This document shows, piece after piece, positions 3,284-63,361 of a DNA stretch of 64,000 nt. Origin of the DNA: Trichoplax adhaerens (lineage: Eukaryota; Animalia; Placozoa). The position numbers were made by a program, and so were the translations under genes. Within the stretch, counting starts at the first letter, position 1. Each line of letters starts with the position of its first letter. The DNA lies in contig NW_002060948.1 in assembly GCF_000150275.1 (NCBI RefSeq), positions 1,858,918 through 1,922,917 of the forward strand. Reading direction: 5' to 3'. The notes under the pieces are model-generated. The model searched no databases. It was not told the origin of the DNA and saw nothing but the letters and a program-made list of their open reading frames with translations.

Positions 3284-3333
3284 NNNNNNNNNNNNNNNNN
3301 NNNNNNNNNNNNNNNNNNNNNNNNNNNNNNNNN
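3284..3333. other. Assembly gap (50 N)
   Basis: Run of N inside the TM exon of gene A. Confidence 1.
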
Positions 3334-6300
3334 AACACCAGCAATAGTAAGACAGAAATAGCAACAATGATAGGAATAACTACGGTATTGGTTGCTGCGG
3401 AAGAATAGCATGAAAAGGAATTTAATATTACACGCAAATAAATTAGCATAAATACTTAATTTCTAGATAAAAGATAGGGATGTTTTAAGCCTAAAAAGCT
3501 ATTATTATCATATCAAAAGAGATTACATAAATGTTACAATTCGTTTTTAATTAAAATATATTTTTCAAGTTCATTTGCTGGAATAAAGTACGTACGTGTG
3601 CTTTGCGGTGATGGTGCTACCGTCGAGAAGACCATTCCAAGACCAACTAAAGCAGAATTGTTGGCATTTTGGATATAAGCTAATAGAGCTGTCATAGCTG
3701 CTTGTGCTGTCTGCGTATTTTCCATGCTTTGCTATATTTTGAATATAAACGAATTTTAAACTTTAAACTTTAAGTTTATAAGACAATTATGTAGCAAAAA
3801 TAGCTAGCTATGGTCTTTTAAAGTATGTATCAGCTACTTTAACAGCTTAGATTAATATCGTTACTAACGATTAGAGAACTTTAAATATAGGCTAAATATT
3901 TATTAGCTAATCTATTATCTGCCAGTTAATGTTAATCATTTTTACTAATAATTAAGACAATACAGTACTAATTTGAATTTGTAAATTACGGAAATAGTGA
4001 CTGGAAATTTATTTTACTATAAATTTCTCGTAAAAGTAATGCCACAGTGATATTAGTCCTATTTAAATATTTATGCCAAGTCGAAATCATAGTCCATTAT
4101 AGTATTATACATACCATAGCAAGAGTAATAATTGCATAAGTGCTGCTTTTAGAATTGACTTTGCATTGAAGATATAAATCTTGAGAGGAACTATAGCTTC
4201 TTAACAGAGTAAGGTTACGTAGCTGGTCACAGATACTGTGAATGGTTGTACCCTAATACAGACAGTATATTCGATATCAAATCCTTATGTTGCTACTTTT
4301 ATATTACTATAATAAATCAAATTAGGAAATTAATAGAGTCCATACCATTTTTAAATTAGTTATATCAACAAATCGAGATTCTCGAACACACCCATTGGGA
4401 ATGGTGTTGTCATTTAAACATAAAAGTCCTTTACGAGTATTAGCACATATTCCAACGTTGCCACAAGATGGTTTTAAGCAATTTAGAGCAGTAATAGCTT
4501 CACAAGAACCTTGTTCTTGGCTGCATGTTCCATTTGTGCAATAAGTTGCTCCACACCACACCTACGAAGGAAGAATATGAAACAACTTAGAATAGAGTTG
4601 ATCATGTCCATTTTTTAGACTTGGCTACAGATCGATATGAATACCTTAGTGCAAGATGTAACTCCGTTATTACATTGGCATCGATTACATTCGTTATCAA
4701 AAGAAACACCATGCTTATAGGTCTGGTTAGCAAATGTACAAGATTGATAGACATCTATACATGAAATGAATGCAAGTTAAGTTATGATGAAATAAAACAT
4801 TCCCTTGTAGTGATAAGCTCAATACATAGCCTACCAGCATTGCAATTTTGTCCGGTGTATTCAGAAGTGCAAATACACTGATATGCGTTAATGCGATCAA
4901 CACATGTGCCTTGATTAAGACAAGGATTCGATGCACATTCATCAATTTCAGCTTGACATAAAACTCCTGTATATCCTGAGCTACAGCGGCAACTATATGC
5001 ATTGACTAAGTCACTGCATGTGGCATTGTTAAAGCAAGGATTGGAAGCACATTCTTGTATATTAGTTTGGCATAGATTGCCAGTAAAACCAGTAATGCAC
5101 ACACAAGTAAAAGAACTGACGTCATCTATACAAGATGAAGCATTGACACATGGAGAAGAAGCACAATCATCGATATTGGTTTCGCAAAGGGAGCCGGTAA
5201 ATCCAAGTCTATAATAGCCAAATATATTAAAGGAATAGAATTAAATCGGTTCTTTATTCGAATATGCAATTGCTGGTAAAAATTAATATACTTGGTGACT
5301 AATAAATTGGCTTTAATAATTTTGATTTCGATATTTAAAAGAGATTGAAATCGAGTTAAATCGATTAATGTCTTTCTAACAGGAGTAGCTAAAAGAATAC
5401 TGTATGTCATTTTAATGCTAGGTCGATCTAACAGTATCCAGGCAATTATTGTAAGATAAAATCAACATTTCTATTAGTTAATAAATCTATCTACACAGTA
5501 TAAATTGTGGTCACGTTTAATACTAAGGGCCCAAACTAACCATATCTTAAATTCATGTACGCGTATAAATTTGTTTTTATACTGAAATGATAAAGACTAC
5601 TCTTCATTATGTCTATACTAACAATAAGAGATATTTAAATGTCAGTCTACATTTCCGTGCTGCTATGTCAACAGTGATTAGTTTAATAATTTGGATTGAT
5701 AATACTTAATAATATCTTTACAGAACTGTTAGCTCGAATGCTTAATTTTAATTCACAAAATACATCTTTTCCTAATAAGACCAATGCTACGTTGATATAA
5801 GCTTAATTTCGCAGATTTAAGTGCAATATTAATGCTTACAATTGGTTAGATAAGTTGCAATTACACTACACTATTCTATCTCAGTAATTTCTAATTCTAT
5901 AAATAAAATCTCTTTTAAAATTAAAATTACTTATCCCTTGCATGATATTACCGATTTTAACTTACCGGCAATTGCATTGATAGCCGTTAATTAAATCGAC
6001 GCAAGATCCAAAATTTAAGCATGGATTTGAAGAACACTCGTTGATATTACTCAAACAGTTTTTACCCGTGTAGCCATTAGGACAAGTACAAGTATAATCA
6101 TTGATTAAATCTGTACAATTTCCTCCATTTTGACATGGCGACTGTGTACAATCATTAATGTTATTTTGGCAGTTAGTGCCGTTATAGCCATCTCGACAAC
6201 GACATTGATAGCCGTTAACTAAATCTTGACATGTTGCACCGTTTTGACATGGATTGCTATCACATTCTCGATCTTCTTCAAGACATTGTTTGCCATGAAA

Positions 6301-9300
6301 ACCTTGAGTACAATTGCAATGATAGTCGCCTACTAAATCAATACATGTCGCATTATTTCTGCATGGAAGTGCAAGACAATCGTTAATATCAGTTTCGCAA
6401 TGAACACCTGTATAGCCATCAGTACAAGAACATTGATAACGATTAATATCATCTTGGCATGTTCCGTGAACACAAGGCGACGATGCACATTCGTCAATAT
6501 TACTCTGGCAATGACGACCCGTATAACCAGAAGTGCAGTAGCATGTATAACTACCAGGTGGAGAATTAACACATACTACCAAATTAACACATGGTCGAAA
6601 ACGACATTCATCGATATCATGATTGCATGTTGTACCATCATAGCCAGTAGAGCAAGAACAGTTAAATTGATTAATTAAGTTATTACATGTCCCGTAAACA
6701 CAAGGATTACTCGAACATTCATCAATTTCAGTTTGACAGTGATTGCCAGTATAGCCAGGTAGACATTGACATTGATATTGATTAATATTGTCGATACATG
6801 CTGCATCATGTTGGCACGGATTACTAAAGCATTCGTTAATATCTGTTTGACATTGCTGTCCAGTATAACCAGCCGGACATTGGCAAGTATATCGATTAAT
6901 TCCATCTATACAGACTCCGTTATTTTGACATGGTACATTGACGCAATCGTCGATATTAATTTGACAATCTTGACCTGTAAATCCGAGTAAACATTGACAA
7001 GAATAGTCGATGGCTTGATCATGGCATTGTCCGCCATTTTGGCATGGATTAAGTGTGCAATTGTCTAAAACACGATTTACCTAATACATCTTCCGGACAT
7101 GTACATGTATAATCATTGACTAAGTCGGTACAATTTCCATCATGGCATGGATTGGGATCGCAATTATCGATATCAGTTTGGCAATGTATACCTGTAAAGC
7201 CTTGAATACAACTGCATTGATAGCGATTAATTTGATTAATACATGTGGCGTTATTATAACATGGGTTACTTTGACATTCATCGATTTCAGTCTGACATAA
7301 TCGACCAGTATATCCAGGATTGCATCGACAGTGATAACCGTTAATGTTATCTAAACAAGATCCAAAGTAGCAAGGATTACTAGAACATTCATCGATATTA
7401 GTTTGGCACATTGTATCAGTATATCCAGGTAAGCATTGACATTGAAATTGATTAATTTGATCATAGCAGCTGCCATTATTCTGGCATGGTTCGGATAAAC
7501 ACTCATCAATATCTATTTGGCAATCCGAGCCATTATAGCCAGGATAGCATTGGCATTGATATTTTGCGATTAAATCAACACATGTAGCGTTATTATAACA
7601 AGGCTGATCAGCGCATTCGTTAATATCGATATGGCAATTAAAACCCGTATAACCGTCAGGGCAGGTACAGTTGTAGTAATTGACGAAATCATAACAAGTA
7701 CCACCTATCCATTAATAACGTAAATAAAAATAAGAATAAAGTGATTAGTAAAGCAATTATGGAGCTATGTAAATAATTTAAATTTTCTGCTTACTTTTAC
7801 ATTAGTAGAAAGTAGAATAATAAATATCAAAATATGCAAAATATTGATTTAATGGTTAATTTTATCTTTGCACCCTGCTTTGACCTGATTACAGTTATCA
7901 AGTCATTTTAACAGATTAACAATTACAGCGCTATTTAAATCTAAAATAAGAGAAAAATAATTAAATACATTATGCAGTAATATAGCCAATTGAATAGTAC
8001 AGTAGCCCAAAATCGATGTTTGTTAGTTAATTAAGCTGATTAATCAGCATTAGCTAATATCAGCAGAATGAAGAATAGCAAAGTTACTGGTCTTATATGT
8101 GCTCAAGTGATTTAATCTCTGTTAATTCATAGATGTCATTACAATTTTTTCTAGTTTGCATCGATCTATGGAATTTGAATCAGTTTCAAGTCATAATTAT
8201 TTAATCAGAATAGTCAACGTTCAATTATTATCAATTAAATAAAGAATAGCAAAATCACAGGTCTAGAATAATTTTAGAGTGATTTAGTCTCGGCTAATGC
8301 ATAGCTATCGTTGTAATTCTTTCTGGCTTGTATTAACTAATGGAATTTACGTCAATTTCAAGTCATAATTAATTAATCTGATTAGTCAATGTTTACTTAA
8401 CATCAACAGAATAAAGAATATCGAAGTTACAGGTCTAGAATAATTTTGGAATGATTTAGTCTCGGTTAATTAATAGCTATCATTTCCATTCCTTTTAGCT
8501 TATATTGCTATGGAATTTGCATCAGTTTCAAGATTAAAGTATAATAAAATGATGATATTGGTAACTTGAAGAATAACAAAGTAATAACTTTGATACAATA
8601 TAATTAGAGAACTAGTATTAGCTATGATGATCAGGTGCTAGCATTGATGAATCTAAGATAATTAAAATCAATAAAATATTGTGATACACTAGATCATAAG
8701 AAACTATTACCGTTTTGACATGGTTTAGTTTCGCATTCGTTAATATCAATTTCACAATTTCGACCAGTGTAACCAGCATCACAAATACATTCATAATCAG
8801 CGACAAAATCTTCGCATGTTGCTCCATTTTGGCATGGATTTGAGCTACATTCATCAATATCGAATTCACATCGCGAACCGTTATAACCTTGCATACAACT
8901 ACATTGGTAGTTATCGATTCCATCCAAACAGGTACCGTTATTGAAACATGGCGAACTTTGGCATTCATCTATATTAATATTACATGTAGTACCAGCATAA
9001 CCTGGAGCACAAGAGCAGTTAAATGCATCGACTAGATCATGGCAAGTCGCACCATTAACACATGGTGTACTAACGCATTCATTAATATCAGTTTCGCAAT
9101 GAACACCGGTATAGCCAAGATGACAAGAACAGCTATAGCCATCAATTCCATCAATACATGTAGCCGAATTTCGGCATGGATTACTTTGGCATTCATTGAT
9201 ATTAACGGCACAAGTAGCTCCTGTATAGCCACTAGCACATGTGCATATAAAGCCATTAATCAGATCCTATTAAGTTATCAATAAATTATGTAGATCAGAT

Positions 9301-12300
9301 AATGTATTACGAATGAAGTTTAAAGAAAGTTGGAAAATACTTCCGTTATGTATTCGTACATCGCATGTTCCGGAATTTTGGCATGGATTAGCTTGACAAT
9401 CATCAATATCTGTTAGAAAGTCAATAGCTGGTTAATTCAAAGTGTAAAGAGAATTGTCTTTTCTACTACTATAATAGTGTCACAGATCTCCTCTGCAACA
9501 CTTGTCCTACTAAGGCTAGCAACTGCTAATCTATCTGCTGTCTCCGACTATTCACCAAACTAACTCTTGATGAATCGTATAGACTAAGACTAACTTTCCT
9601 AATAACAAATAGTGATATAGAATTCGTAGACTGACAACTCGATTAACAATCGTCATATTAATATGTCAATCGAAAATTACTTAAAATGCAAAATGCATAG
9701 ATTCTCTCAAACTTAACACAGAATCAGAAAAATGTAGATTTGATTCTAAAATTACTGATGTACAGCAACAAGCTAATTAGATAGTAATTTCAAGACACGA
9801 AATAGTTTCTTGTGATATTTAAAATAGAAGCGATAAAGTATAGCTAACAGCCATCCGCGTCTATATTAATAAATTGATCGATAATTATAATCCATTCAGA
9901 ATTCAAACAGATAATGTATTTTATCATATAGTAAAGTTAATTAAAAATAGAACTGGCTTAATATGGACTTGAATAAGATCATCCAAGTCTATCACTAAGC
10001 TATAGCAGTAAATTTTTAGTTTAAAATGTAAAATCGGTGTAGTATCTTTTCTGGTAAGATACCATAGCGAAATTAGTTTGTTATTATTTGTTACACCTTG
10101 ATTAATTTATCATCCTACCATAACTTCAGTATACCGTAATGCTTTCAATTAGCTAAAGTATAGCTCGTCTACTGAATCTTGAGCTCCTTAAGTATTCTTA
10201 GATATTGATATTGCATAAGTAGATGTTAATGATTAGTGTATAAATGGCTTACCTGTTTGGCATAAGTTACCAGTGATTCCATCTATGCATTGACATCGAT
10301 AAGAATTGACTTGATCAATACAAGTAGCATTATATTGACATTCATTGGATAAACAGTTATCGATATCTGTTATATAAATGAAAAAATACGTTAATTGATA
10401 CGAATCTTATGATAAGCTCTTTCAAATGCTAGCATCTTAATAGCATCTACACCTATTTCGTTACCTGTTTCACATAATACACCTGTATAGCCAAGAGTAC
10501 AATTACACTGGTAGCCATCAATTGAATCAGTACAATTACTTCCATGTTGGCATGGACTGGATTTACATTCATCAATATTAGTTTGGCAATAAGTTCCAGT
10601 ATAACCCGCAAGACAGGTACAGTTATAGCTATTAATCAAATTATTACATGTACTACTATGCAAGCATGGATTACTATTGCATTCATTGATTTCGTAGGTG
10701 CAATTGGTACCATTATAGCCAGGTTGACATTGACATCGATACTGATTAATTCCATCAATACAAGTCGATTGATGTTGGCATGGATTAGGATTGCAATCAT
10801 CGATATTAACATCACAATGATCTCCAGTAAAGCCAGTACTGCAATTACAGAAGTAGTTAAGATGGAGATCGACGCATGTACCGTTTACACAGGCATTTCC
10901 ATGAGTATTATTGCATTCATTGATGCCTATAAGTTAAGAAAGGCATTCAGTATTAAATTAGCAATATTATAAGATGCTATCTTTCCTAAGATAGCGCAAG
11001 CCATTCGAGTACTTACTTGAATCACATAATGTCCCAATCCATCCATGATCGCAGTTGCAATGAAATTTATTGACCTGATCCTCACATGTTCCATTATTCA
11101 TACAAGGCGTAGATGAGCATTCGTTAATATCTGCCATAAATATTTTAAAGAATATTAATATGAAGATATTTCTTGTAGTTTATTTTACGATAAATTAGAC
11201 ATTCAGTGTTTCCTATTTAAAGCAAAGCAGTTGACAAATTATTGAATAATTAAAATTCTGTCTATTAGATCACTATATTGAGAATCTAATTACATTAGAG
11301 GCTATCTATCGACCTCTTTGAACTTAATTTTAGTTCTAATCAATTTTGTAGAGAATGGTATGTATTAATGTACTGTATTGAACGATGAAATATCATTATA
11401 TTGAGGAGCTAATCATATTGGAGTCTACCTGTTGACCTTGTTAAGCTTAATTTAATTCTAATCAAATTCCGTAGAGAACGGTATTTATGTACTGTATCGA
11501 ACAATGAAATTTATAGTACACAATCAAAAATGGCCTAATCTAAATCGAAAATTTATTCCCTATTAACACATACTTATACGATAACTATCTTAATTTACTG
11601 CTAATTAATAATCATGCTTCGGTCATTACTTGTTTGGCAAAAGGTGCCCATAAAACCAGCTATACATGTACAGTTATAATAATCTGTTCCATAGTTGCTA
11701 CAAAAGGCTCTATTTTGGCATGGATTGCTACGGCAAGGATTCATGTCTGTAAAGTAATTAAACGGATATTTTATTAGATAACAGTTAAAATTATCACATA
11801 CACTAATGCAATCTTATAATATCTCAGTACAAACTAGCTTTTACAGATAACTGATAAAGAGAGAAAATGTGCAATAACAAAGAGTAGTATAAATTCCATT
11901 AAACAAAAATATGCTTAAGACCTGATTGGCAGTGGACGCCAGTCCAATTACTGAAACACTGACAGGTATATCCATTTACTAAGTCGTGACAAGTCGCTCC
12001 ATTCATGCAAGGATTAGAAATACACTCATCCGCATCTTCAAGAAAATAAATTATTTTATAACCGTAATCGATACATACTTTATCTAATTTAAAATCTACT
12101 TTATTACCAAGCGATAATGAAATATAATTGTAGCTTAAAGTAATGTTTAAATAAGATTGCATAGAACAGACTTGTTTGACATTGAATTCCTGTAAATCCA
12201 GCCACGCAATTACAAACGTGAGTATCTGGTCCAGTATTGACACAACTTCCTTGATTTATACATGGTGAACTTCGACAGGTATTTAGATCTATTAATTACA

Positions 12301-15300
12301 TCCAAAAGTATATGTTTTTAGATATCTATCTTACACTGCAATTCCTAACATCAGATTACAAACTATGTTTACTAACCCGATTGGCATTGAACTCCTGTCC
12401 AATTGATCGGACATGAACAGCTGTATTGATTAACTAAATCGTTGCAAGTCGCATTGCCGTAGCATGGATTAGATCCGCACTCATTTATATCTATAAAAAT
12501 ATATTTTAAATATATTGTTGGATTATTTCATCTTCTATTATTGTCTAGGAGACTTCAGTCCTTACTTGTTTCACAATTACTTCCTGTATAGCCACTTAGA
12601 CAACTGCATGTATACATGTTAGGCTGTGTATTAGTACATGTTCCACTACCAGAACAAGGAGAACTTCGGCAAGAATTTAAATCTAACAGATTAAATTGAA
12701 TGTAGAACTAAGATTCGTAACTCTATAACATGATAGCGTATCTTTTCATAAACAAATTAGGATATATTTACCATCTGCACATGTAGTTCCAGTTCTGTCT
12801 GGAGGACAAATACACCGGAAACTATTAACTTGATCTGTGCAATTACCGTGGCGGCAAGGATTGGACTGACATTCATTAATATCTGATAGACAATAACACA
12901 ATCGATTATATGGCAATATTTAGATAGCATCGTTTAAGTTTACTGAGATACTATGTCTTTAGCATTAGTTTATATTAATTATGATTGAAAATAGATATTA
13001 CTTGTTATACAGTTTGTTCCTGTAAAACCGGCAATACATGAGCATTGATAAGCGTTTGCACCAGAGTTAATACATGTCGCACCATTGTGACAAGGAGAGC
13101 TGCGACAGCTGTTTAAATCTAATTTCATTACAAATATAAGTAAATATAAATTGAATGTCTAATTGATATCCGTATTGTTTAGGATGAGGTATTATAAATG
13201 TTTAAATTATTGAATGTTCGATCCACCTCAGTTACATCGACAGCATCATTTTCGATGATTTAAAAATTAATTGTATACGCCAACGTACCTGATTGGCAAG
13301 TATGACCAGTATAATTAGCCATGCAAATACAATTGTAGCTATTTACACCATCTACGCAAGTTCCTTGATTTTGACATGGATTAGTATTGCAATCGTTGAT
13401 ATCTATTGTATTTCAGAAGAGATATTCATTGTATTGATGTTGTTGTAATACTATTTTACAGATTTAAAATTTTTAATTTTTTCATTTATGTAATAAATAA
13501 GATAAAGCATAAAGTTACAAAACCAAGATTTCTAAGACGAACGATACTAGCGATAAATAGATATTTCGTCATCTCAAAGATTATTTTTAGGGATATATTA
13601 CTCACTTGTTTGACATTGCGGACCAGTAAATCCAGTAGCACAAGTACACGCGTACACATCTGGTCCAGTGTTACTACAAGTTGCGCCATTTTTACATGGA
13701 CTGCTACGACAAGAATTTAAGTCTGTAACAATATTAAGGACCGTTTAATATAATTAACACATTATTTCAGCATTGTTTTGTAAGTATTACTTATTCCCAT
13801 GTAATCAATCAAAGCAATAAAAACATGTAATATCACATATAATACACTAAAAATTGATACAGCATGTATTTAAAACTACATCAAATCAATCCTTTATCTA
13901 AATATTTCCATACCTTGACCACATTGTATCCCTGTCCAATCAGATGGACAAAGACAGTCATAACGATTAGCACCATCCACACATGTTGCATAGATATGTC
14001 TACACGGATTAGAGGCACATTCGTTGATATCTTTAACAAAAACGATAATTATAGACAGAAATATAAGGGAATGCTAATATTAGAAGCAAGTAAAAATCGA
14101 TTTTATACTATCAAATTGATATTATATTAAAAACTAACTTATTTCACATATTCTTCCTGTGAAGCCAGTAGGACATGAACATGTATAATTATTGATTCCG
14201 TGATTTATACAAGTTCCTCCATTCGAGCAGGGCGAAGAGCGGCAAGTGTTTAAATCTTTCAAATATGTAGAAATATACACAATTAATTTGTACGTAATGC
14301 TACCAAGCCTTATAAATACTAATCATATTTCGATAACAACGCCTTAATTTAATAATATTCATATACATTAGTAACTTTTAATAACCGACCATTTTGACAA
14401 TGTATTCCAGTCCAATTTGCTGGACAAGTACAACTATAACCGTTTATTTGATCATTGCAAGTTGCAGTTGATTGAGTGCATGGATTAGATGCACATTCGT
14501 TGATATCTTAATTAATATCAGGACATGCAATATTGACCAACGTTAGCTAACAATCAATTAAGAATAAAGCAGTAATATATAACGCAACTAACTTGTTTGG
14601 CATCGATTTCCTGTATAGCCAGTAACACAAGTACATTGAAACCGATTTGCGCCATTGACACATGTACCACTGTTTTGGCATGGATTGCTACGACAGTAAT
14701 TTAAATCTATAGGAAAGTAAGGCGGTTAGAGTACTTAATACCAAGTTTACTAGCGTGGTACATACAATATAAATTTCATAAATATCAAAATATGGCCAAG
14801 ATAAGATTAATACGCCGTTTTTATCACATATCGCTAAATAAAAATTACAGTACTTAAAGAAAGAATCAAAGATGATGAAAAATTTTAGAAATAGATTCTT
14901 TCCTTAATTATTACAGCTAATACTAATTCTATTTGGAAATAAATGAACTGTTGCCAAATTGATATAATTGCTTTGAAGAAAGATGTAATCATTTTAACAT
15001 TCTATTCTAATGGTTTGTTATAAATAGAAGACTAATACTGGGTAATAAATTAACAACTACGGAATATTAAATATTTTGCTTTTAGGCTAGCTTTCGCTTT
15101 AACTAATTTTTCCTATAGCTACTGAGTAAATTACAAGGGTAATTCCATTACATAGCCGTTAGCTCTGCCTTATCACGTAGTTTATTGATAGATATTAAAT
15201 CATCAATTAATTAAAAATTGAGTTTTACAGCTACAGTTGCGAGTACTTACCAGTTTGACAATTACTTCCTGTATAGTCACTTGGACATGTACATTGATAC

Positions 15301-20263: not shown

Positions 20264-21849
20264 GGTTGGAGTGCAGATAACTGTTTCGATTAAGTACAAT
20301 AAAATCAGCTATAAAATTGCTTTCAATGATGTAGTCTTTACTAGTAGCCATAAGTGGCAACCGCCAACTTGAGTATAACCCGCTAATTAACCAGACACGT
20401 TTCTTCTCCAATTAATAGCGAGGTATAAAAAGCAGAGGCTTTCACCTATAATATCGAACCAAATTAATAGCTATGCTATAAAATATAATAGCGGTAAAAT
20501 TAAATCAACAATTTCTAAGTTATTTAATAGTTAATTTAGGCGAGAAGAAATATTATCGATCGCTATCGGTAAGCTATTTGCCATCGCTATTTCTATAAAT
20601 CTCTCAAACATTTAGCTTTAGGGTGTGACGAAAGTTTACCCATGAGTGACAGAGTGATTAAGTCAACAAATAATAAAATAGATTCAGTATGCAGATCGAG
20701 AATCTGTAACGAACATTTTAAGCGAAGTACAGAAATCTTTCACTGGCGAAGTAATAAACGGTGATAGAAGTTGAACTTAATCCTATTATTTAAGAATATT
20801 AGGTAGGCAGTCTTATTAAAACGTTACTGGATAATCATTCAAGACTATTTTGTAGTGAAGGAATATTTAATTTATAACTAAAAGTCAGACTCAAATTCGA
20901 TGTTTACTCAAATATGCCACTAAGCTGACGGCAAAATCAAGAACTTGGGGTCGTATTAACTTTAAATCAAAGTAACTATTACATGATTATTTAGGATCTA
21001 ACACCCATCACCTTAAAGATAAATGACATCTATAGGATTTTCGATTTCTGCAATTGACCAATTTATAAGTTTACAAGTTAAATATGGCATTAACTGCGTC
21101 ATTATAGTTAACTTAAGGCGAGGATGGGAAATGATCAGTTTAAGTCTAGACAGCATACGAGTTGTAGATTTGAATCTGACATCTACTTCGATAGCAACTG
21201 TAATCAAGTGTCGGTAACGACCAGACCAATAAAGTAAGACTATAGCGGTGATTTTCTAAGTATACTTGGCTGATTCTAGAGATATCAAATAGATTGATGC
21301 TGTTATTTCTATCTTGGTACGTAGTGTTAATTAAAGTACGGGAACATCATAAAGCTGTAAGCCGGCTACAAAATTTCAAATAGTTAGACTATAAACTTCA
21401 TTATAAAGGTGTTCAGTAAATATATCATGGCTTTAAAATAATAACTTTGTAGGTTTAGTTAAAGACCCGATGATATAGATCTATTCACGCTAAAAGACTT
21501 TACAGCTACTAGTGACTCTATCAAATCAATCTCTCTCTAGAAGCTTGACCGTTTAATACAAACAAAGCTAATATCGGACAGTAATATCAAAATCTAATCA
21601 TGTTTAAATACAAAGTTTAGTACATTATTTATAATTTATTATCGAAACTGGAAACAAAATTTTAGAATACAATTATTTAAACTACCTTGAAATAAGATTA
21701 GAATGTGATAGAATTTAAGCAGAAATAGCAATTAATACAACCACCTGTTTTGACTGACATTGTGAGTGGAGTTTAAATTAAGTTTCACAATCTAATTCAA
21801 GTTATTGAAATAACTTAAAGATTTACTTAATTAAACTTATGATCAAATT

Positions 21850-27486: not shown

Positions 27487-38905
<11,419 letters not shown>

Positions 38906-54200: not shown

Positions 54201-57200
54201 TGGCTCAAACTGTGAAACAAATATTAATGAATGTGCCAGCCAGCCTTGCTTGAATAATGCAATGTGCAATGATTCCATTAATAATTATTCATGTATTTGC
54301 AATTCTGGCTTTACGGGAATATATTGTGAAACCAATATTAACGAATGCCTATCGATGCCATGCCGTAATAACGGCACCTGTATCGATCTGATTAATGCTT
54401 ATGTGTGTCAATGTTTTAACACAGGCTTTACTGGACTTAACTGTGAAAGCAGTGAGTTTATAAATTCTTCTATCACTAATAGAAGTTAATATGAGACGAA
54501 TGCTAAAAAACGATATAATCTTGGTTTTCCTAGCTTTATAAGACAGTTTACGATTAAAAATTTATTATATAGATTAGATTAAATAATCATATTTATTATC
54601 TTCATAGATATCGATAACTGCCAATCAGCTATCTGCTACCATAATGGAACATGTATCGATGAGATAAGAGATTATCATTGCAATTGTACAAGTGGCTGGG
54701 AAGGCAAGCAATGCCTGCAAGGTAGTAAAACTTAAAATACCTATACAATATAAGAGTAATTGTATCAAAAACGACGCACTGATATTAAACTTATATACAT
54801 TCAAATTAATTTTTCAATTCTCTATCTTGTATAATCAGAAACCAATGAATGTTTATCCAACCCCTGCTTCCATGATAGTACCTGCATCGATATGTTTGAC
54901 ATGTACCGGTGCAATTGTACTAACGGATATAACGGCACAAACTGCGAAAGTGAAATTAACGAATGTGCTTCTTCGCCGTGTCTTCATGGCGGTTTCTGCG
55001 AAAATGCAATTGGTAGCTTTATTTGCCACTGCGGTTTTGATGGCTTTACTGGTGACCGATGTGAAATCAGTTAGTTTCGAAAATAATTAGAAATGTGATA
55101 ATATTTACTGATGGACTTATACACATTGTTCAAAGATTAACACTGTTGAATACATTTATCTATTATTTTTCTGCAATGATCTTGGTTAAGATTCCACTTT
55201 TTAACGAATCAGTTGTAATAACGTATAATCGGAAAAGCATGTCTACCCTTATTATGTTTTTACTGATAGACTTATGCATACTTTATTATTTATAGATTCA
55301 TAGATTAATACTGTACATTTATCTATTATTTTTCTAATCTAATTAAGGCTAAAACTTCACTTTTTAATAAATTAGTATATAACGACGTATAATCTGATAT
55401 ACATGTTTACCGATAAGCGTTTCTATGCCACTGCTAGACTACGTATTCGATAGCATATTCGCTCAATCAAATGATGTTGATTCCTAATTTTTTATCTCTT
55501 CATCTTTTAAAAATTAGATATTGATGATTGCATCAATAGTCCATGCAATAATAATGGGACATGCATCGATTTAGTGAACGATTTTAGGTGTAATTGTGCT
55601 AATGGCTACTCTGGAAAACGCTGTGATATTAATATCGACGAATGTCAATCTCAACCTTGTATGCATAATGGAACATGCATTGATCAAATTCATAGTTATC
55701 GATGTAATTGCCTTGGTGGATATACTGGCAATGCTTGTGCTATCAACATTAACGAATGTTCATCCAGTCCGTGTCAAAATAATGCTAGCTGTGTGGATAT
55801 TATCGATGAATATATCTGTGATTGTGCAAACGGCTTTACGGGTACTGTATGTGAGACTAATATCAACGAATGTCGATCGCAACCTTGCAGTAATGGGGCA
55901 ACTTGCATTGACATGATTGATGGTTATAAATGCAACTGCAAGAATGGATTTACTGGTATTACTTGCGGTATTAACATTAAAGAATGTTTATCGCAACCTT
56001 GCCAAAATAATGGCACCTGCATTGATATGGTCAACAGATATATTTGCAATTGTAACCCTGGTTATACTGGAATTCATTGCCAAACAGATATCAATGAATG
56101 CCAATCACAACCATGTCAAAATAATGGTACTTGCTTCGATTTAATCAATTACTTTAGTTGTAACTGTATTGCTGGATATACTGGACCTACCTGTCAAATT
56201 AACATTAATGAATGCCAATCGCATCCATGTCAGAACAATGCTACCTGCCAAGATATGGTCAATGGTTATAATTGCCATTGCGCCGACGGATATACTGGAA
56301 ATACTTGCGATATCGATATTAACGAATGTCAATCTCAACCGTGTATTCATAATGGAACTTGTATCGATTTAATAGACGAATTTAATTGCATTTGCGCTGA
56401 TGGCTATACCGGAGTAATGTGCCAAACAGACATTAACGAATGTCAATCTGTGCCTTGCTTGAATAATGGAACTTGTCTGGTAAGTCAAATGGTTTATTGC
56501 ATAGATCAAAGTCTTAGATTAGTTAAGTGTATTTTAAAAATAGCCACCAATTATCCTTTCCGGTCGTTTTATGACTGTAGTGTAATATGTCCGATATATC
56601 GAATGGTTTATTGTATAGACAAAAGTATTGATTAGTGAAGGCTATTTTATAAATAGCTACCAATGAATCTTTCTGATCGTTTTATGACTATCACTTTTAG
56701 GATTTGATTGGTAGCTATCAATGCCAATGTCAACCTGGTTACACTGGATTACAGTGCCAAGTCGATATCAACGAATGCGCTAGCAATCCTTGCGTGAATA
56801 GTGGAACTTGTTTGGATCAAATCAATCAATATCAGTGCAGATGTAATCCGGGCTATACTGGAACCCAATGTCAAACTGAAATTAATGAATGTCAATCAAC
56901 TCCATGCCTTAACGGGGCAATTTGTAATGATTACGTTAATTACTATAATTGCACCTGTTTACCTGGTTTTACTGGTCAATATTGTGAAATTGAAATCAAC
57001 GAATGTAATTCTTCACCTTGTCGTCACGGTTAGTCATTTCTATCATTTTGAGCTAGCGTTAATTCAGTAGTTCTCAATCTTTTCGGGACAAAAGCCTCTT
57101 TTTATGCTATACAGTACTTAGTCTATTTAATGCAATATGTTCCAACCTAAAATCAGCAGGATTAGAGATTTATGTTAGCTATTTTCAGCATATGATGGAA

Positions 57201-60200
57201 ATAGTATCAACCTATCGCCTTTTTTAAGTCAAGAAATAATTTAAAGAGATTTATGATTGTTTTTTGACTTATAGGTGGAACATGCAACGATTTCATCAAT
57301 GCTTACAACTGTACATGCATCCCTGGCTACACTGGAATACATTGCGAAATCGACATCGATGAATGTGCGAGTAATCCATGCGTTAACTCCATTCTTTGCG
57401 CGAACCTTTTGGATAAATATCAATGCTATTGCAAGCAGGGCTTTACCGGCGTTAATTGTCAAACTAATATTAACGAATGCGCTTCAAATCCATGTCAAAA
57501 TTCTGGTACTTGTACTGATTACGTCAACTATTATCAATGTACCTGCATGCCAGGATATACTGGTAGTACTTGTGAAGTGAATATTAATGAATGTGCCAGT
57601 GCACCATGTCGCTATGGCGGTACATGTCTAGATCTAGTCAATGGCTATAACTGCACATGTGAAGGTGGTTATAGTGGAGCAGATTGTCAGATTAATATTA
57701 ATGAATGCTCGAGTATGCCTTGTTTAAATGGTGCTACTTGTATCGATAATTTAGATGCATTTGATTGTACATGTGCAGCTGGGTTTACTGGTGTAATATG
57801 TGAAACAAATATTAATGATTGCAACCCTAATCCATGTCGCAATAATGGAACCTGTACAGATTTGATTAATGACTACCATTGCAACTGTTTACCTGGCATC
57901 CAAGGCAAATCATGCATTGATAGCTGTAATGGTCAACCTTGCCAGCATAATGGGACTTGCCAAGATCAACACGATTCTTATAAGTGCTATTGTGCAATAG
58001 GATATACAGGAATCGATTGTGAAATTAATATTGATGAATGCAGCAGCAGTCCTTGTTTGCATGGTGCGTGTTTTGATGGTATAGATGGTTATCGATGCTT
58101 ATGCATTGTTGGTTATACTGGAACTAACTGCATTACAGAAATTGATGAATGTTCTGATCAACCGTGTATTAATGGAACATGTCGAGATAGAATTAACGAT
58201 TTTTATTGCAACTGCACACCTGGCTTCGATGGAAAAAGATGTCAAAATGACATCAACGAATGCCTATCCAATCCTTGTAGAAATGATGGCACTTGTATTG
58301 ATAATATTAACAGCTACCAATGTACATGCTTTGGTTATACTGGTGTCAATTGTGAGACAGAAATTGACGAATGTGCTAGTTCACCATGTACTTCTAATGG
58401 CGTTTGTGTCAACAGGATTGGTAGCTATTCTTGCGCTTGTAAGCCAGGATTTACTGGTAGTAAATGTCAAACGAATATTAACGAATGTGCATCATCGCCT
58501 TGCGTGCATGGATCTTGTGTCGATTCCGTCTTTGGCTATAAATGCAATTGTAATGCAGGCTATACTGGTGGTCATTGCCAGAATGAAATCAATGAGTGTG
58601 CTTTTGTGCATTGTTTTAACGGTAACTGTATCGATTTAATTGCAAATTATACTTGTAATTGTACAGCTGGCTATACTGGCCGATATTGCCAATTCGATAT
58701 TAACGAATGCCAAAGTAATCCATGCCAAAATGGAGCAACATGCGCTGATTTAATCAATCGTTATCAGTGCTACTGCCAATACGGTTTTACTGGCACTCAA
58801 TGTGAAACCAACATCAACGAATGTAGCAGTAATCCATGTCGTCATAGAGGAACATGCCATGATCAAATCAATGGCTATTCTTGTTCTTGTCCAGTTGGTT
58901 ATACTGGAACAGTGTGCCAAACGGATATCAATGAATGCCAGCCTAATCCATGCCATAACCAGGGACAGTGTACAGATAAAATAAATGGATACAATTGCAC
59001 TTGCCTGTAAGTTTTTTATGCTATGCAACTGCTTCAAATAGTCAGTTTCAAGAAGCTCTGCAGTACCTTACCAGTTAAAAATAGATTCAAATAATTTATT
59101 TTTTACTATACCATAAGAAGTAACTTTAGTTCATTAACATGCCAAAACAGGGACCATGTACAGATAAAATAAATGCTCATAATTGTACTTGCATGTGAGT
59201 TATTTTATACAATATATTTACTCCAAATAGATCCGTTTCAATAAGCTCTAAAGTATCTTACCAGTTAAAGAATATACCAATATAAATAGTTTATTCTCTT
59301 ACTATAAGTAACCATCGTTCAATAACATACCAAAACCGGGGACAGAATATAAAATAAAAATAAATGGCTGTAATTTCATTTGCTTTTAAGATCTTTTATC
59401 AATCCAACTGCTTCAAATAGATCTGTTTCTATGAGCTCTAATGCGTCTTAATAGTTAAAGAAATACATAAACAGTTTTAGTCTCTTACTATAAGAAGTAA
59501 CCTTAGTTCATTAAGACTACCATTTCAGATATATTACTAAAGCTTTGATTTTGTTGCATTAGACCTGGTTTCACCGGTGTAACATGCGAGACCAATATTA
59601 ACGAATGTGCTAGCAATCCATGCGTTCATGCATTTAGCTGTGTTGATCAAGTTAATAACGTGCACTGTAATTGCCAACCTGGTTACCATGGCCACTTCTG
59701 CCAGATTCAAACAAATGAATGTTTATCATCTCCATGTGTTAATGGCACTTGTATCGACCAAATTAACTCATATCATTGCAATTGCTCAACTGGTTTTACT
59801 GGCAGTAATTGCGACACTGATATCAACTATTGCACTAATGTCAATTGTAATAATCACGGTAACTGCATCGATTCACTAACTACCTATCATTGCCAATGTA
59901 ATCCAGGCTATACTGGCAAAGATTGTCAAACAGGTAACATATGCAATAGATGCCTGCATTTCTCTACGAAAATTTGTTAGCTGTTTGCAATATCTGATTC
60001 AATTTCATCTTAAACTTTATTAATACTTATCAACTTCAAATTTTAAAGTCGGTACTATTAAGAATAATAGAAGTCGATTTCTGCTAGTTAACAAATGATA
60101 TATCCGGTGTATTAAGATTTTATTCCTATGCTAAAGATCACCTTTAAGAAATTAGATTAAATAGCTTAGGTAACGTAATGGATATTAGTAAGCGCAATAT

Positions 60201-63200
60201 TTACCGAATAGTTATTCCCGATAGTCAGAATATCGGACATCAGATTAAATAATTACCTTCAGCAGCCATCCCATTAAACATAGTTTATAAAATACTTCAA
60301 ATTATTCATCTATGTGATATAATAAGTTTAATCTAGCTTTTGAACAGTATTAAATGATAGTATTACTCTTCATAGATTATATATCATAATAAATAGCTTG
60401 ATTTATACTAGTAGTTAACGACAAAGTATGCGAATATAGACGATAAATAAGCCAACATTGATGGAAATAGATATATAAATTCTGATATTACCTCGAAGAT
60501 GATAATCAATGTAAATGGCACGGTTATGAAAATTTAGTAAATATCAAATAGTATTGAACTAGATAATGATATCACTTTTCTAACTGGAAAGTGCTATAGA
60601 TATTCCATACATACATCATGTCTTCAGCTTCAGGATATTTTAGTATTACATTGCATTTGTTGGACGAGATTTACCGCTCTACAAATTAGTTGCTATCATT
60701 CATCTCATTTTATTTCCAATTATATAGAAATTGACCACTGCTTAAGCAATCCATGTGATTCTAATGGCAATTGTATTAATAATCCAACTGGTTATAAGTG
60801 TTATTGTTATACCGGCTTTACAGGATTAGATTGCACTTTAGGTAAGAACTAAGCTAATTACAATTATATGTCATCAAAATAAGATAATATTATTGTAACA
60901 TTGCTATCGTTAGATAGGATAAATATTGCCATGCTAGTCATCTAAATCTTGCAAGATAACTTAATAACCTCCAAAATCAACAATAAATCTATCCTGTTCT
61001 TCAATTATCTACTTTTTTAGTTACCTTATAATAATATATTTCTATTATTAGGTAGAATAAATATTGTCAAACTAGTCATTTAAAAGCTACAAGACAACTT
61101 ATTAACCTCTAAAATCAACTATGAATTTATCTTGTTATTAAATATATCCAACTTTTAGTTACTTGTGTCAGTAATGGAATAGCCTATCAAAATGGTAGCA
61201 GCTGGCTTAGTGATTGCAATAAATGTACCTGCGAAGGAGGACAAAAAAGTTGTACAATGGTAAATTTTCTTTTAATACCTATTCCAACGATAGTAATATT
61301 TATCATTAAAGATAGTGAATTTATTAATCTCGTCCTGTATATTATTTTTATCCACTAATTGCTCTGTAGATTTGGTGCGGCCCAACAGCTTGCAATCCCT
61401 CACTACAAGGCCAATGTGGACAAAATGATACCTGCCAATCGTTATCGCAAAATGAATGTGTTAAGCCACCTTGCTCAACTGCCAGTTTCTGCTCAAAAAG
61501 TGAATTAGGATTAGATTGCCTTAACTATGTTGGCCATTCACCAAGCAACTGTTACCGACAGTCATTTCTAATCGGCCATAATAGCCTTACAAATGTAAGA
61601 GATTATAGCATGATTATACTAGCTTAAGGTCTCAACCGAGCTGAATGTTGAACGTTAGCTCGATTACATGAAATTTTTTAATCAGCGTTTCATATATCTA
61701 CTCGCACATCAGGGGACAACCATCACTGAATTATGCAATGAATTACGATCCGTGAATGTATTGAAAAGTTACTCAAATAACGGCAGCCTCATTTTGCAAT
61801 GTAAAATCGAACAGAAAACATCAGAGGGAATTCGAATTGCATTAGCCACGGTAAAATTTTAGCCTACGAGAGTATATACAGCAAGCTTATTATTTACGTT
61901 AAAAACAATAAAATAAAATATTTAAAACTTTGCGCAAACTGTCCATATCTTCTTCGTATTTCTATTATATATTAATACAACTGTAGTGATCTATTTAAGC
62001 ATCAAAGTACTATCTAACTCATCACATCCAAATCCTAGCTGCATAAAGAATACATATCTTAGATATGCTATCTCTAAATACATATTGCTCTACATAATGC
62101 CATGTTACGTTACACTACTGTATCTAAATATAATGATAGCGCCAGGTATTAATTATATTTATCTATAAGTAATCGCGTGTATATATATATACACAACTAC
62201 ACATTAATTACACAAAAGTATTTGTAGATTTTTTAACGTTATTGACTACAATTTCTACTATCGCTAACAGATCTTTTCTCTCTATCTTTTAATTTGTAGA
62301 AATCCGCTTCCGGAAGTCAATACGCCCAGTCAGCATTGACAGCATTATTGTTAAGCCTTCAGACAGGACAAGGGAATAATCCACCAGTTCAGCTATTACC
62401 CATCAAAGCGGAAGGTATTCATGTTAACCTTATACGTTATCATCAAATTTGAAGACATTTTATGTTTAGCGTGCTAAAATATCGATCAGGATATGTCTAT
62501 GATAGATTAAATAGCTAAAGTTTCGATTTTAGGAATCAAATAGTCATTTCATCTTTAAAACTTCGAAATGGAATTTAATAATTCTCTCATGTTGTAGGTT
62601 TCAACGCTACTGTTATCGGTATCATCATCGCTATTGCTATTTTTCTGCTTGTAGCTGTCTTTTTGTATCGACGACGTCGACGTAAACAAACTGCTCAAAA
62701 GAATTCTGTATCTTTCGAGCAACAGTTATCGTCTATCGCTCCAGCTACAAGTATAACTAATCCACTGTACAAAGAAGGAGATCTGGATTTTCCAGATCTG
62801 CCTGCTCGGAAAGAAAGCCGTTTCGATAGTCCTGACCTCGACGGTGACGAGCAAGTTCAATTGCATAGTACCAGAAGTAAATTTAGCGTTGATAGCTTTG
62901 CTAAGCGAAATCAAAACTATTCTAGTACCTATTTTGAGAATCCTGCCATCAATGATAACGAAAGTGCTCACCAGCAATACCCTGAAACTAGCGTACCTAA
63001 TAACGGTATAGTAACCAATACAAATGGCAAGGACGGTAGCCTCTATAAATCAGTTAACGGCAAAGGTGATAACGACAAGGTTACATTATTTATGACAAAG
63101 AAATCATCTTCCAAAATGCGTGAACGAAGTGATAGCTTACCTACCGATACCACGACTTTACAAAAAGGAAATGGCCTTCAAACTGCCGACGATTATTATT

Positions 63201-63361
63201 ATCAAAATTACGATGATCAATCATTGGTTAGTGGAAACAGAAGGAGGAAGAGATCGAGCATAATGAAGAGCATGAGCGATATTTACAATCATGTTACATC
63301 AAACGCATCCAAGAAGAAGTCCTTCAGGGACAGCCATGATGAAGGTTCACTTATCAATTAA
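42218..63361 (+). CDS. Gene C: giant Jagged/Serrate-like type I membrane protein (SP-C2/MNNL-12 EGF-DOS-~48 EGF-vWC-juxtamembrane-TM-~230 aa tail), ~2994 aa, no intact DSL
   Basis: Exons: 42218-42280, 42983-43276, 44295-44511, 44675-44791, 44941-45057, 45250-45366, 45672-45785, 46050-46166, 46272-46388, 46756-46872, 47022-47138, 47550-47666, 47889-48008, 48285-48401, 48816-48929, 49029-49092, 49224-49285, 49912-49983, 50073-50189, 50838-50951, 51087-51203, 51347-51460, 51602-51718, 52045-52161, 52616-52732, 52829-52942, 53652-53768, 53879-54451, 54608-54721, 54839-55069, 55518-56479, 56701-57028, 57275-59006, 59563-59933, 60728-60841, 61159-61259, 61370-61594, 61713-61850, 62300-62414, 62598-63361. 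Lengths sum to 8985 nt with an open frame. Confidence 0.88.
42983..44511 (+). other. Gene C MNNL/C2 domain exons plus DSL stub
   Basis: [32 protein letters not shown]...CVYG...[12 protein letters not shown] | [13 protein letters not shown]...[15 protein letters not shown]. Confidence 0.85.
49029..49983 (+). other. DOS motif (atypical EGF1-EGF2 of Delta/Jagged) encoded by three small exons of gene C
   Basis: Spliced product [22 protein letters not shown]|[20 protein letters not shown]|[24 protein letters not shown] aligns Cys-for-Cys with Jagged1 AICRQGCSPKHGSC...[34 protein letters not shown] (recalled sequence). Confidence 0.85.
49425..49910. repeat. Intronic tandem repeat, ~120-bp unit, ~4 copies
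   Basis: atgttcagta.tattgcaat...accatta...tatctactc.tc...ttttcgtt recurs at ~49431, 49551, 49671 and 49791. Confidence 0.9.
50345..50590. repeat. Intronic tandem repeat, 81-bp unit, 3 copies
   Basis: attagca...taagtc.ta...tatatat...actattatgt at 50346, 50427 and 50508. Confidence 0.85.
58945..59515 (+). repeat. ~190-bp tandem triplication spanning an exon 3' end and donor site
   Basis: catgcc..aac.ggga...cagataaaataaatg...aattg.acttgc.tgt.agtt...caaatag...agttaaa...agtaac at ~58949, ~59138 and ~59325. Confidence 0.85.
61159..62414 (+). other. Gene C vWC/cysteine-rich and juxtamembrane domain exons
   Basis: [32 protein letters not shown]|IWCGP...CVKPPC...|[18 protein letters not shown]. Confidence 0.85.

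What the first reader, a model, noticed from the sequence alone, without database searches (positions are those of the whole stretch)
3334..63361. Cluster of three DSL-less, Jagged-like proteins: a non-canonical Notch-ligand-like family
Seen: all three genes have the Jagged scaffold (SP, MNNL/C2, EGFs, vWC with VWCG, juxtamembrane ICxxLRN motif, TM). Where the ~45-aa, 6-Cys DSL should lie there is only a 2-Cys stub: [12 protein letters not shown] in [13 protein letters not shown] in [13 protein letters not shown] in C. A phase-1 intron and ordinary EGFs follow. Established: canonical ligands bind Notch EGF11-12 through C2 plus DSL. Inference: DSL loss predates the triplication and the scaffold has been kept intact since. 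These proteins could be co-ligands or cis-modulators (like DSL-less DLK1/OSM-11), Notch-independent adhesion or lipid-binding receptors, or a relic pre-DSL ligand architecture.
Basis: partly seen in the sequence, partly recalled or inferred. Interest (0 to 1): 0.9.

Follow-up and report, generated by a model that had tools for sequence, protein, structure and literature searches.

The report
Placozoan Jagged-like genes lacking DSL
Three intact neighbouring genes (one shown to be expressed) in a Trichoplax-like genome encode Jagged/Serrate-type membrane proteins whose Notch-binding DSL domain has shrunk to one small disulfide loop, which shows that placozoans do have Jagged-lineage genes, but in a form that probably cannot signal to Notch in the usual way.

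Summary
Genes A (-, about 3.3-20.3 kb), B (+, 27.5-38.9 kb) and C (+, 42.2-63.4 kb) each encode a signal peptide, a two-exon MNNL/C2 domain and a C-x8-C stub where the DSL should be. EGF arrays of about 51, 16 and 61 repeats follow, then a vWC/Cys-rich region, a Jagged-type juxtamembrane domain and a TM segment.

- **No DSL:** none exists in any frame of the window.
- **Splicing:** RNA contigs splice gene B exons 1-7 as predicted, and the stub exon joins straight to the first EGF exon.
- **Conservation:** a deeply diverged placozoan keeps the stub in its orthologues of A and C.
- **Jagged identity:** the C-terminal ectodomains score 62-96 bits against a profile of real Jagged/Serrate proteins; shuffled controls reach 5 bits at most.
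- **Family size:** the trio belongs to about 14 stub-bearing loci. The genome has only one true DSL ligand, a Delta.
- **DOS pair:** gene C keeps EGF1-2, displaced behind 12 EGFs; A and B lack it.

Secondary DSL loss in a Jagged-lineage ancestor is the best reading; a pre-DSL relic is unlikely. Function is untested, and canonical Notch trans-activation is improbable. Published surveys call Jagged absent from Placozoa. This scan had already found the same family on neighbouring DNA (s1-751077).

The parts
20210..20263 (-). Gene A exon 1: start codon and signal peptide ([18 protein letters not shown]), phase-0 GTAAGT donor
19604..19891 (-). Gene A exon 2: N-terminal half of the MNNL/C2 domain
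   Evidence: Pfam MNNL 23.4 bits; splice sites
19260..19476 (-). Gene A exon 3: C-terminal half of C2 plus the DSL stub (19267-19302); ends in phase 1
4835..18693 (-). Gene A EGF array, about 51 repeats, many Ca-binding with O-Glc/O-Fuc consensus sites. Draft exon chain, open through its whole length; not checked by RNA.
3341..4754 (-). Gene A C-terminal module: vWC-a 4645-4754, vWC-b/Cys-rich 4346-4561, juxtamembrane ferredoxin-like exons 4115-4252 and about 3596-3731, TM exon from about 3394, cut by the N gap
27487..27543 (+). Gene B exon 1: signal peptide ([19 protein letters not shown])
   Evidence: RNA junction 27543>29237
29237..29533 (+). Gene B exon 2: N-terminal half of MNNL/C2
   Evidence: Pfam MNNL 36 bits; DLL4 C2 E = 3.7e-4; RNA junctions
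30230..30452 (+). Gene B exon 3: C-terminal half of C2 plus stub (30410-30445). It is spliced directly to the EGF exon at 30601.
   Evidence: RNA junction 30452>30601 in three RNA runs
30601..36478 (+). Gene B EGF array, about 16 repeats. Exons 4-7 are RNA-confirmed: 30601-30717, 31301-31420, 31821-31934 and 32721 onward. The rest is a draft chain.
37065..38905 (+). Gene B C-terminal module: vWC-a 37065-37177, vWC-b 37316-37555, juxtamembrane 37684-37821 and 37945-38077, TM plus tail 38580-38905 (stop TAA)
42218..42280 (+). Gene C exon 1: signal peptide ([21 protein letters not shown])
42983..43276 (+). Gene C exon 2: N-terminal half of MNNL/C2
   Evidence: Pfam MNNL 16.5 bits, below the cut-off; family profile 130 bits
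44295..44511 (+). Gene C exon 3: C-terminal half of C2 plus stub (44469-44504)
   Evidence: orthologue L015
44675..48929 (+). Gene C: 12 single-EGF exons alternating between an EGF3-like type (DLxSCRSSPC...) and a second type, lying between the stub and the DOS pair
49029..49983 (+). Gene C DOS-type EGF1-EGF2 pair in three exons (49029-49092, 49224-49306, 49912-49983): [14 protein letters not shown]...[10 protein letters not shown], then NTCVKREGC...[12 protein letters not shown]
50073..60841 (+). Gene C distal EGF array, about 47 repeats including large multi-EGF exons; draft chain
61159..63361 (+). Gene C C-terminal module: vWC-a 61159-61259, vWC-b 61370-61594, juxtamembrane 61713-61850 and 62300-62414, TM plus 230-aa tail 62598-63361 (the tail holds ITNPLYK)
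   Evidence: (PF23575, E = 0.005)

Best explanation
A, B and C are expressed or intact paralogues of the Jagged/Serrate lineage in a placozoan genome. The genome's size and contig count fit Trichoplax adhaerens.

Each is a type-I membrane protein built, from the N-terminus, of a signal peptide, a Notch-ligand C2 (MNNL) head, EGF repeats, a vWC/Cys-rich region, the Jagged-specific ferredoxin-like juxtamembrane domain, a TM segment and a tail. The DSL domain is reduced to a single C-x3-[W/Y]-x-G-x2-C disulfide loop. The DOS pair (EGF1-2) is deleted in A and B and pushed 12 EGFs away in C.

This is a secondary loss that happened once, before a placozoan-specific expansion to about 14 loci.

Mechanism (inferred): the proteins display a lipid-binding C2 tip on a long, largely Ca-binding, glycosylatable EGF rod. 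They lack the second DSL loop that contacts Notch EGF11, and they lack the C2-DSL-EGF1-3 register used by Delta and Jagged. They therefore most likely do not trans-activate Notch canonically. I take them to be Notch-independent adhesion or recognition receptors, or at most weak or atypical modulators. The Jagged-type juxtamembrane domain and tail may still direct processing or endocytosis.
For: **Architecture and splice sites:**

**No DSL:**

**Expression:** RNA splicing of gene B with no extra exon.

**Shared gene structure:** the same two intron positions as in the canonical Delta, after 'WP' and after the DSL position.

**Jagged identity of the C-terminal module:** 83.9, 62.3 and 95.6 bits against a profile of five Jagged/Serrate proteins, with shuffles at most 5 bits. 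The ferredoxin-like part alone scores 36, 20 and 41 bits, with shuffles at most 11. PF23575 hits gene C's single exon, and in the whole genome it hits only family members.

**Family-wide stub:**

**Orthologues in a deeply diverged placozoan keep the stub:** synonymous sites are saturated (pS 0.57-0.91) while pN is 0.24-0.26.

**Only one true DSL in the genome:**

**DOS:** retained in C and in neighbour D.

**Open draft reading frames:** 2363, 982 and 2742 aa without stops.

**EGF features:** Ca-binding, O-Glc and O-Fuc consensus sites are abundant.
Against: No functional data of any kind.

C2 alone contacts Notch EGF12 in solved complexes (from my knowledge of Luca et al. 2015 and 2017), so residual Notch binding is not excluded, especially for gene C, which has a DOS pair.

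Genes A and C have no RNA support here. Their mid-gene exon chains come from a home-made predictor, which mis-set one RNA-known junction in gene B by a few bases.

The C2 tree groups the family only weakly: SH-aLRT 84, with 11 of 13 members.

No 3D model of the C2-stub unit could be made.
Confidence: 0.7

Rival explanations
1. They remain Notch-pathway ligands or modulators. The C2 head, plus the DOS pair in gene C, would still bind Notch weakly. The proteins would then act as cis-inhibitors, co-ligands alongside the single canonical Delta, or low-gain trans ligands whose endocytosis is driven by a Jagged-like tail.
For: The C2 domain is conserved under purifying selection. Gene C and neighbour D keep a DOS-type EGF1-2 pair. 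Gene C's tail holds ITNPLYK, which resembles the Jagged N-box core seen in the real Jagged proteins returned here (..NPIKNPIDK..) and the IKNTWDK box of Drosophila Delta (PMC11887331). The genome has a Notch-type receptor with LNR repeats.
Against: The part of the DSL that carries the Notch EGF11-contacting residues is absent from all about 14 paralogues. A and B have no DOS. Removing or displacing three modules breaks the antiparallel register of the known complexes. An expansion to about 14 genes with 16 to 63 EGFs is unusual for a pathway ligand.
Confidence: 0.25
2. Relic architecture: a C2-EGF-vWC protein that never had a DSL. This would be the 'EGF+VWC' precursor from which Jagged was later assembled (scenario II of Gazave et al. 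2009).
For: Gazave et al. proposed this from partial Trichoplax models (PMC2770060). No member of the family has a DSL.
Against: The stub is a DSL/EGF-type C-x8-C loop at exactly the DSL position, and it ends at the intron shared with the canonical Delta's DSL exon. DOS EGF1-2, which normally follows a DSL, is present in C and D. The nearest C2 domains outside Placozoa all sit next to DSLs. The same genome's Delta has C2 plus DSL plus DOS.
Confidence: 0.05
3. Artefact or decay: mis-assembly, or pseudogenes whose DSL exon was lost recently.
For: A 50-N gap cuts gene A's TM exon. A diverged copy of gene A's 3' half on contig C1287 has a frameshift.
Against: Gene B is spliced and abundant in three RNA runs. 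The draft models have no stop over 982 to 2742 codons. The stub and its flanks are conserved across saturated synonymous divergence. The same structure occurs in about 14 loci.
Confidence: 0.02

Closest known systems
Jagged/Serrate (canonical DSL ligands of cnidarians and bilaterians)
   Same: SP, MNNL/C2, EGF array (gene B has about 16, as Jagged does), vWC/Cys-rich region, PF23575-type ferredoxin-like juxtamembrane domain, TM and tail. The C-terminal module aligns collinearly at 62-96 bits.
   Different: The DSL is reduced to one disulfide loop. EGF1-2 (DOS) are absent in A and B or displaced in C. A and C have 50-60 EGFs. The family is expanded to about 14 loci.
The Trichoplax 'EGF+VWC' protein noted by Gazave et al. 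2009 (PMC2770060)
   Same: Almost certainly partial models of these same genes: EGF repeats followed by vWC, never with a DSL.
   Different: That paper did not report the N-terminal MNNL/C2, the DSL stub, the DOS pair or the Jagged juxtamembrane domain. It concluded that Jagged is absent from Placozoa.
Vertebrate DLL3
   Same: A ligand-family member with MNNL but a degenerate DSL (no Pfam DSL according to PMC12166595). From my own knowledge, it cannot trans-activate Notch.
   Different: DLL3 keeps a DSL-sized, divergent module and is Delta-type, without vWC or the ferredoxin-like domain. Here about two thirds of the DSL is physically missing.
DLK1/DLK2 and C. elegans OSM-11/DOS co-ligands
   Same: DSL-less proteins related to Notch ligands. 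Gene C shares the DOS motif with them.
   Different: They lack the C2 domain and vWC and are defined by DOS. A and B have C2 but no DOS, which is the opposite arrangement.
Neighbouring giant gene of the same family (scan finding s1-751077, about 22 kb upstream of this window)
   Same: The same C2 head and the same stub (MQC-ANGYSGSRC; L038). It is part of the same tandem cluster.
   Different: I did not examine whether it has the vWC/ferredoxin-like module. Searches with those exons did not hit it.

Membership tests
Jagged/Serrate | N-terminal MNNL/C2 domain | tested here: met
   Pfam PF07657 on exon 2 alone: A 23.4 bits, B 36 bits (cut-off 22.5), C 16.5 bits. DLL4 C2 in the PDB at E = 3.7e-4. 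Intron positions are shared with the canonical Delta.
Jagged/Serrate | DSL domain (six Cys, YYG motif, Notch EGF11 contact loop) | tested here: not met
   Only a C-x8-C loop remains. No Pfam DSL hit in the window. The local DSL HMM gives at most 10.5 bits in any frame. RNA shows no extra exon in gene B.
Jagged/Serrate | DOS-type EGF1-EGF2 immediately after the DSL | tested here: not met
   Absent from A and B. Present in C, but 12 EGFs downstream of the stub. PF21700 passes its cut-off only in the canonical Delta.
Jagged/Serrate | vWC/Cys-rich region after the EGF array | tested here: met
   Pfam VWC half-domain hits on single exons, 15-25 bits, below the cut-off because the domain is split by an intron. 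The spliced region scores 48-57 bits against a Jagged profile, with shuffles at most 6.
Jagged/Serrate | Jagged-specific ferredoxin-like juxtamembrane domain (Pfam PF23575) | tested here: met
   PF23575 on gene C's single exon: E = 0.005, 17.4 bits, covering one third of the model. The spliced region scores 36, 20 and 41 bits against a profile from 11 Jagged/Serrate proteins, with shuffles at most 11. Gene B is the weakest.
Jagged/Serrate | Single TM segment and cytoplasmic tail with Mind bomb N-box/C-box | tested here: inconclusive
   TM segments are present in all three. Gene C has ITNPLYK, which resembles IKNPI[DE]K. Gene B has no clear box. Gene A's tail is lost in the assembly gap.
Jagged/Serrate | Binds and trans-activates Notch | not testable with these tools
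I ran no complex prediction because I make no binding claim.
DOS co-ligands (DLK1, OSM-11) | DOS motif without DSL and without MNNL | tested here: not met
   A and B lack DOS. C has DOS but also has MNNL and vWC.

The most novel reading that the evidence does not exclude
Placozoans converted the Jagged lineage into a family of about 14 DSL-less, C2-tipped receptors that work outside canonical ligand-receptor signalling. Two forms of this are possible. They could be cell-cell recognition or adhesion molecules whose C2 head engages the opposing membrane. Alternatively, because their arrays of 50-60 Ca-binding, O-Fuc/O-Glc-consensus EGFs resemble the Notch ectodomain, they could be decoy or alternative receptors for the genome's single Delta. 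Either way it would be a natural experiment separating the C2 function of Notch ligands from their DSL function.
Probability: 0.3. Interest if true: 0.85.

Novelty: new variant of a known kind. Interest (0 to 1): 0.66.

Why it matters
Comparative surveys state that Jagged is absent from Placozoa. They treat the Trichoplax 'EGF+VWC' protein as a possible precursor of Jagged (PMC2770060), and the 2025 survey still lists only a Delta for Trichoplax (PMC12166595).

These gene models show the opposite. A complete Jagged-type scaffold, with C2, a DOS remnant, vWC, the ferredoxin-like domain and a TM segment, existed in the placozoan lineage. It then lost its receptor-binding DSL once and radiated afterwards.

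This moves the origin of Jagged to before the split between placozoans and the cnidarian-bilaterian lineage. It removes the main support for the domain-fusion scenario. It also supplies a set of natural DSL-deletion, and partly DOS-deletion, ligands for asking what the C2 domain and the Jagged C-terminal module do on their own.

Tried and rejected
- **Hidden DSL exon.** Rejected by RNA junctions for gene B, by a six-frame DSL HMM scan of the whole window and by the Pfam DSL genome scan. The introns of B (148 nt) and C (163 nt) are also too short to hold one.
- **Other DSL genes in the genome.** The five weak Pfam DSL hits (L002-L006) are MEGF/laminin-type EGFs.
- **Exon 3 against PDB sequences.** No hit.
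- **Stub-exon profile against 5.8 billion proteins.** Only two fragments from another placozoan turned up, so no non-placozoan stub was seen. The search sees only proteins of 41-130 aa, so it is weak evidence.
- **Whole-library HMMER search with the C2 exon.** It returned mostly exon-sized fragments without names. Only two of the ten hits looked up carry a name.
- **Search with gene C's 580-aa exon for public Trichoplax models.** It returned only generic EGF proteins such as fibropellin, Crumbs and Jagged.
- **C2 tree.** Too few columns to place the family relative to Jagged or Delta.
- **First pass of my exon-chain predictor.** It inserted spurious mini-exons. The stricter run still mis-set one RNA-known junction by a few bases, so the mid-gene exons of A and C are drafts.
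- Joined (spliced) models were analysed only inside local scripts. They were not sent to database searches, structure prediction or complex prediction, so there is no fold model of the C2-stub unit.
- **Rfam.** Nothing in the window.
- **Human sequence.** One protein returned carries a human name (P0240). I did not look it up further. It was one of the P0188-P0307 hits scanned when I extracted the 116 DSL segments for the local HMM.
Full report
**Setting**

The window is G000:C1409:1858918-1922917 of a 105.6-Mb, 1414-contig, 31% GC genome. Size and contig count fit the Trichoplax adhaerens assembly. That is my inference from memory; an earlier scan note also calls it Trichoplax.

The genes have short GT..AG introns and many one-EGF exons in phase 1.

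**Observation**

I defined the 5' exons from open frames and splice sites. Each gene has:
- a short signal-peptide exon;
- a 96-99-codon exon that Pfam recognises as the first half of MNNL/C2 (A 23.4 bits, B 36 bits, C 16.5 bits), and gene B's exon matches the DLL4 C2 domain in the PDB at E = 3.7e-4;
- a 72-74-codon exon holding the rest of C2. This exon ends ...[V/I]xC-x3-[W/Y]-x-G-x2-C-xx, followed by a phase-1 donor.

The next exon starts an ordinary EGF of the DLNSCxSSPC type.

The genome's one canonical ligand lies on contig C1403 (MNNL 104.8 bits, DSL 71.2 bits). It has introns at the same two positions, after '..TWP' and right after the DSL, and its DSL lies in the same exon as the second half of C2. 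The missing DSL is therefore an in-exon deletion, not a skipped or overlooked exon.

Three direct tests agree:
- Pfam DSL finds nothing in this window.
- An HMM I built from 116 DSLs scores at most 10.5 bits in any of the six frames, and only on generic C-x8-C loops.
- Contigs from three RNA-seq runs carry the gene B junctions 27543>29237, 29533>30230, 30452>30601, 30717>31301, 31420>31821 and 31934>32721. The stub exon is thus spliced straight to EGF1.

The reads tool allowed only one call, so genes A and C have no RNA support here.

**What the stub is**

I joined the exons inside a local script and aligned them with real C2-DSL proteins. The last C2 strand plus the first DSL Cys (..F.YR[V/I].C) lines up with ..FQAEVKC..IKMHIQC and ..FEMEVKC.

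The remaining loop, C-x3-aromatic-x-G-x2-C, fits both the first (YYG) and the last (GWxG) DSL loop. Which one survived cannot be decided. Either way, the middle of the DSL is gone.

From my own knowledge of the JAG1 and DLL4 complexes with Notch1 (not tested here), that middle part carries the Notch EGF11-contacting residues.

Gene A's 'third Cys' is a substitution at loop position 1.

**C-terminal identity**

Exon-level Pfam gave only half-vWC hits. One search returned genuine Jagged/Serrate proteins. Pfam shows that these carry PF23575, a Jagged-specific ferredoxin-like domain between the Cys-rich region and the TM segment.

- Gene C's 46-aa juxtamembrane exon alone hits PF23575 at E = 0.005.
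- Spliced in a script, the vWC-to-juxtamembrane modules of A, B and C score 83.9, 62.3 and 95.6 bits against a profile of five Jagged/Serrate proteins, in one collinear alignment. 300 shuffles of each reach 5 bits at most.
- Split in two, the vWC/Cys-rich part scores 48-57 bits and the ferredoxin-like part 36, 20 and 41 bits. Shuffles reach at most 6 and 11 bits.
- In the whole genome PF23575 touches only members of this family, not the canonical ligand, which is therefore a Delta.

**Gene bodies**

A simple splice-aware chain predictor gave open frames of 2363 aa (A), 982 aa (B) and 2742 aa (C) up to the TM exon. The corresponding counts of six-Cys EGFs are 51, 15 and 61, and gene B has further EGFs split by introns.

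The predictor mis-set one RNA-known junction in gene B by a few bases, so the mid-gene exons are drafts.

Most EGFs of A and C are Ca-binding type and carry O-glucose (C-x-S-x-P-C) and O-fucose (C-x4-[S/T]-C) consensus sites.

**DOS**

Gene C contains a textbook EGF1-EGF2 pair at 49029-49983: AICRTGC..HGNC....[11 protein letters not shown], then NTC....GC..G.C.....[12 protein letters not shown]. It is followed by an EGF3-type repeat, but it sits behind 12 extra EGF exons.

**Family and conservation**

Profiles of the two C2 exons find 16 and 14 hits respectively in the genome. With near-identical copies counted once, that is about 14 loci:
- the three genes in this window;
- a giant gene upstream, at 1.83 Mb;
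- one just downstream, at 1.925-1.934 Mb;
- a cluster at 4.26-4.38 Mb;
- a cluster on contig C1411;
- one on C1341, plus small-contig copies.

Every exon-3 match carries a C-x8-C stub and none has a DSL; in one (L043) the second Cys reads Y. The vWC/ferredoxin module is found in A, B, C, gene E (4.257 Mb) and a C1287 copy, and only its vWC-b exon matches, weakly, at 1.926 Mb (gene D) and 1.947 Mb. Gene D also has a displaced DOS head; gene E (63 EGFs) has none.

In assemblies of another placozoan (run SRR30664517), the orthologues of A and C keep the stub (VKCCSTWTGSNC and ITCAPNWAGALC), the intron and the following EGF. Synonymous sites between the two species are saturated (pS 0.57-0.91) while pN is 0.24-0.26, which indicates purifying selection.

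Outside Placozoa, every C2 relative I could inspect sits next to a full DSL: L011 and a sea-anemone protein with MNNL plus six DSLs, among others. In a C2 tree, 11 of 13 family members group with their placozoan orthologues (SH-aLRT 84). The canonical Trichoplax Delta sits in a separate, supported clade (95) with other, unnamed MNNL fragments. The tree is too short to say more.

**Interpretation**

Shown:
- identity as Jagged-lineage genes;
- absence of the DSL;
- expression and splicing of gene B;
- family-wide and cross-species conservation.

Inferred:
- a single secondary loss before the family expanded;
- inability to use the canonical C2-DSL-EGF1-3 interface.

Function is unknown. I commit to Notch-independent adhesion or recognition, or at most atypical modulation, by a C2-tipped EGF rod. 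Residual Notch modulation is the main rival. For gene C, that rival is helped by its DOS pair and by an N-box-like ITNPLYK in the tail. The genome does encode LNR-bearing Notch.

**Literature**

Gazave et al. 2009 state that Jagged is absent from placozoans. They saw vWC only with EGFs in Trichoplax and built an origin-of-Jagged scenario on that. The 2025 survey of 58 species lists only a Trichoplax Delta and a Jagged clade made of cnidarians and bilaterians. Three full-text searches found no description of these DSL-less genes.

An earlier follow-up in this scan found the same family from the upstream giant gene (s1-751077). My genome searches reproduce its figure of about 15 genes.

**Limits**

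- Spliced models were used only in local scripts. They were not sent to database, fold or complex tools, so there is no structure of the C2-stub unit.
- There is no RNA check of genes A and C.
- Gene A's 3' end is broken by an assembly gap.

Noticed in passing
window 32120-32620 (intron 6 of gene B): An interspersed repeat of about 400-500 bp. The genome search gave at least 660 first-look candidates at about 90% identity. RNA contig depth is very high and there are many variants in all four runs. It matches no Rfam family. It is probably a transcribed non-autonomous mobile element.
   Followed up: partly
window 49431-49908 (intron inside gene C's DOS pair): A tandem array of four copies of a 120-bp unit (75% matches), lying between the two exons that encode EGF2.
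   Followed up: partly
window about 3290-3340: A 50-N assembly gap cuts gene A's TM exon, so its cytoplasmic tail cannot be read from this window.
   Followed up: no
L057 (G000:C1287:2957-6094): A diverged copy of gene A's C-terminal half (EGFs, vWC, juxtamembrane domain, TM, tail), with a frameshift in the vWC-b exon. It may be a pseudogene, a divergent haplotype or a paralogue on an unplaced contig. Its tail contains ..NIYRNQLNLDN...
   Followed up: partly
G000:C1409:1925.7-1934.4 kb (L060, L064), just beyond the window's 3' end: Gene D on the minus strand: stub LKC-ESQWLGSLC, 17 six-Cys EGFs, a displaced DOS-type EGF1 head (CREGCNLDHGHC...) and VWCG. The tandem cluster therefore continues past the window.
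   Followed up: partly
G000:C1409:4257-4272.8 kb (L059, L063): Gene E on the minus strand: stub VTC-ESTWSGTDC, 63 six-Cys EGFs, VWCG and the genome's best PF23575 hit (25.4 bits); no DOS head. A near-identical N-terminal exon pair lies 36 kb away, at 4.308 Mb.
   Followed up: partly
L002-L006 (C1409:3.94 Mb, C1414:3.63 Mb, C1408:0.51 Mb, C1387:0.38 Mb, C1409:0.70 Mb): The sub-threshold Pfam DSL hits are arrays of MEGF/laminin-type EGFs (C..G.YG..C...C.C), not DSL domains.
   Followed up: yes
P0083 (NCBI KAK3698607.1, Actinostola sp.): A sea-anemone protein with one MNNL followed by six DSL domains. In the C2 tree it falls in the weakly supported group (SH-aLRT 80) that also holds the placozoan family.
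   Followed up: no
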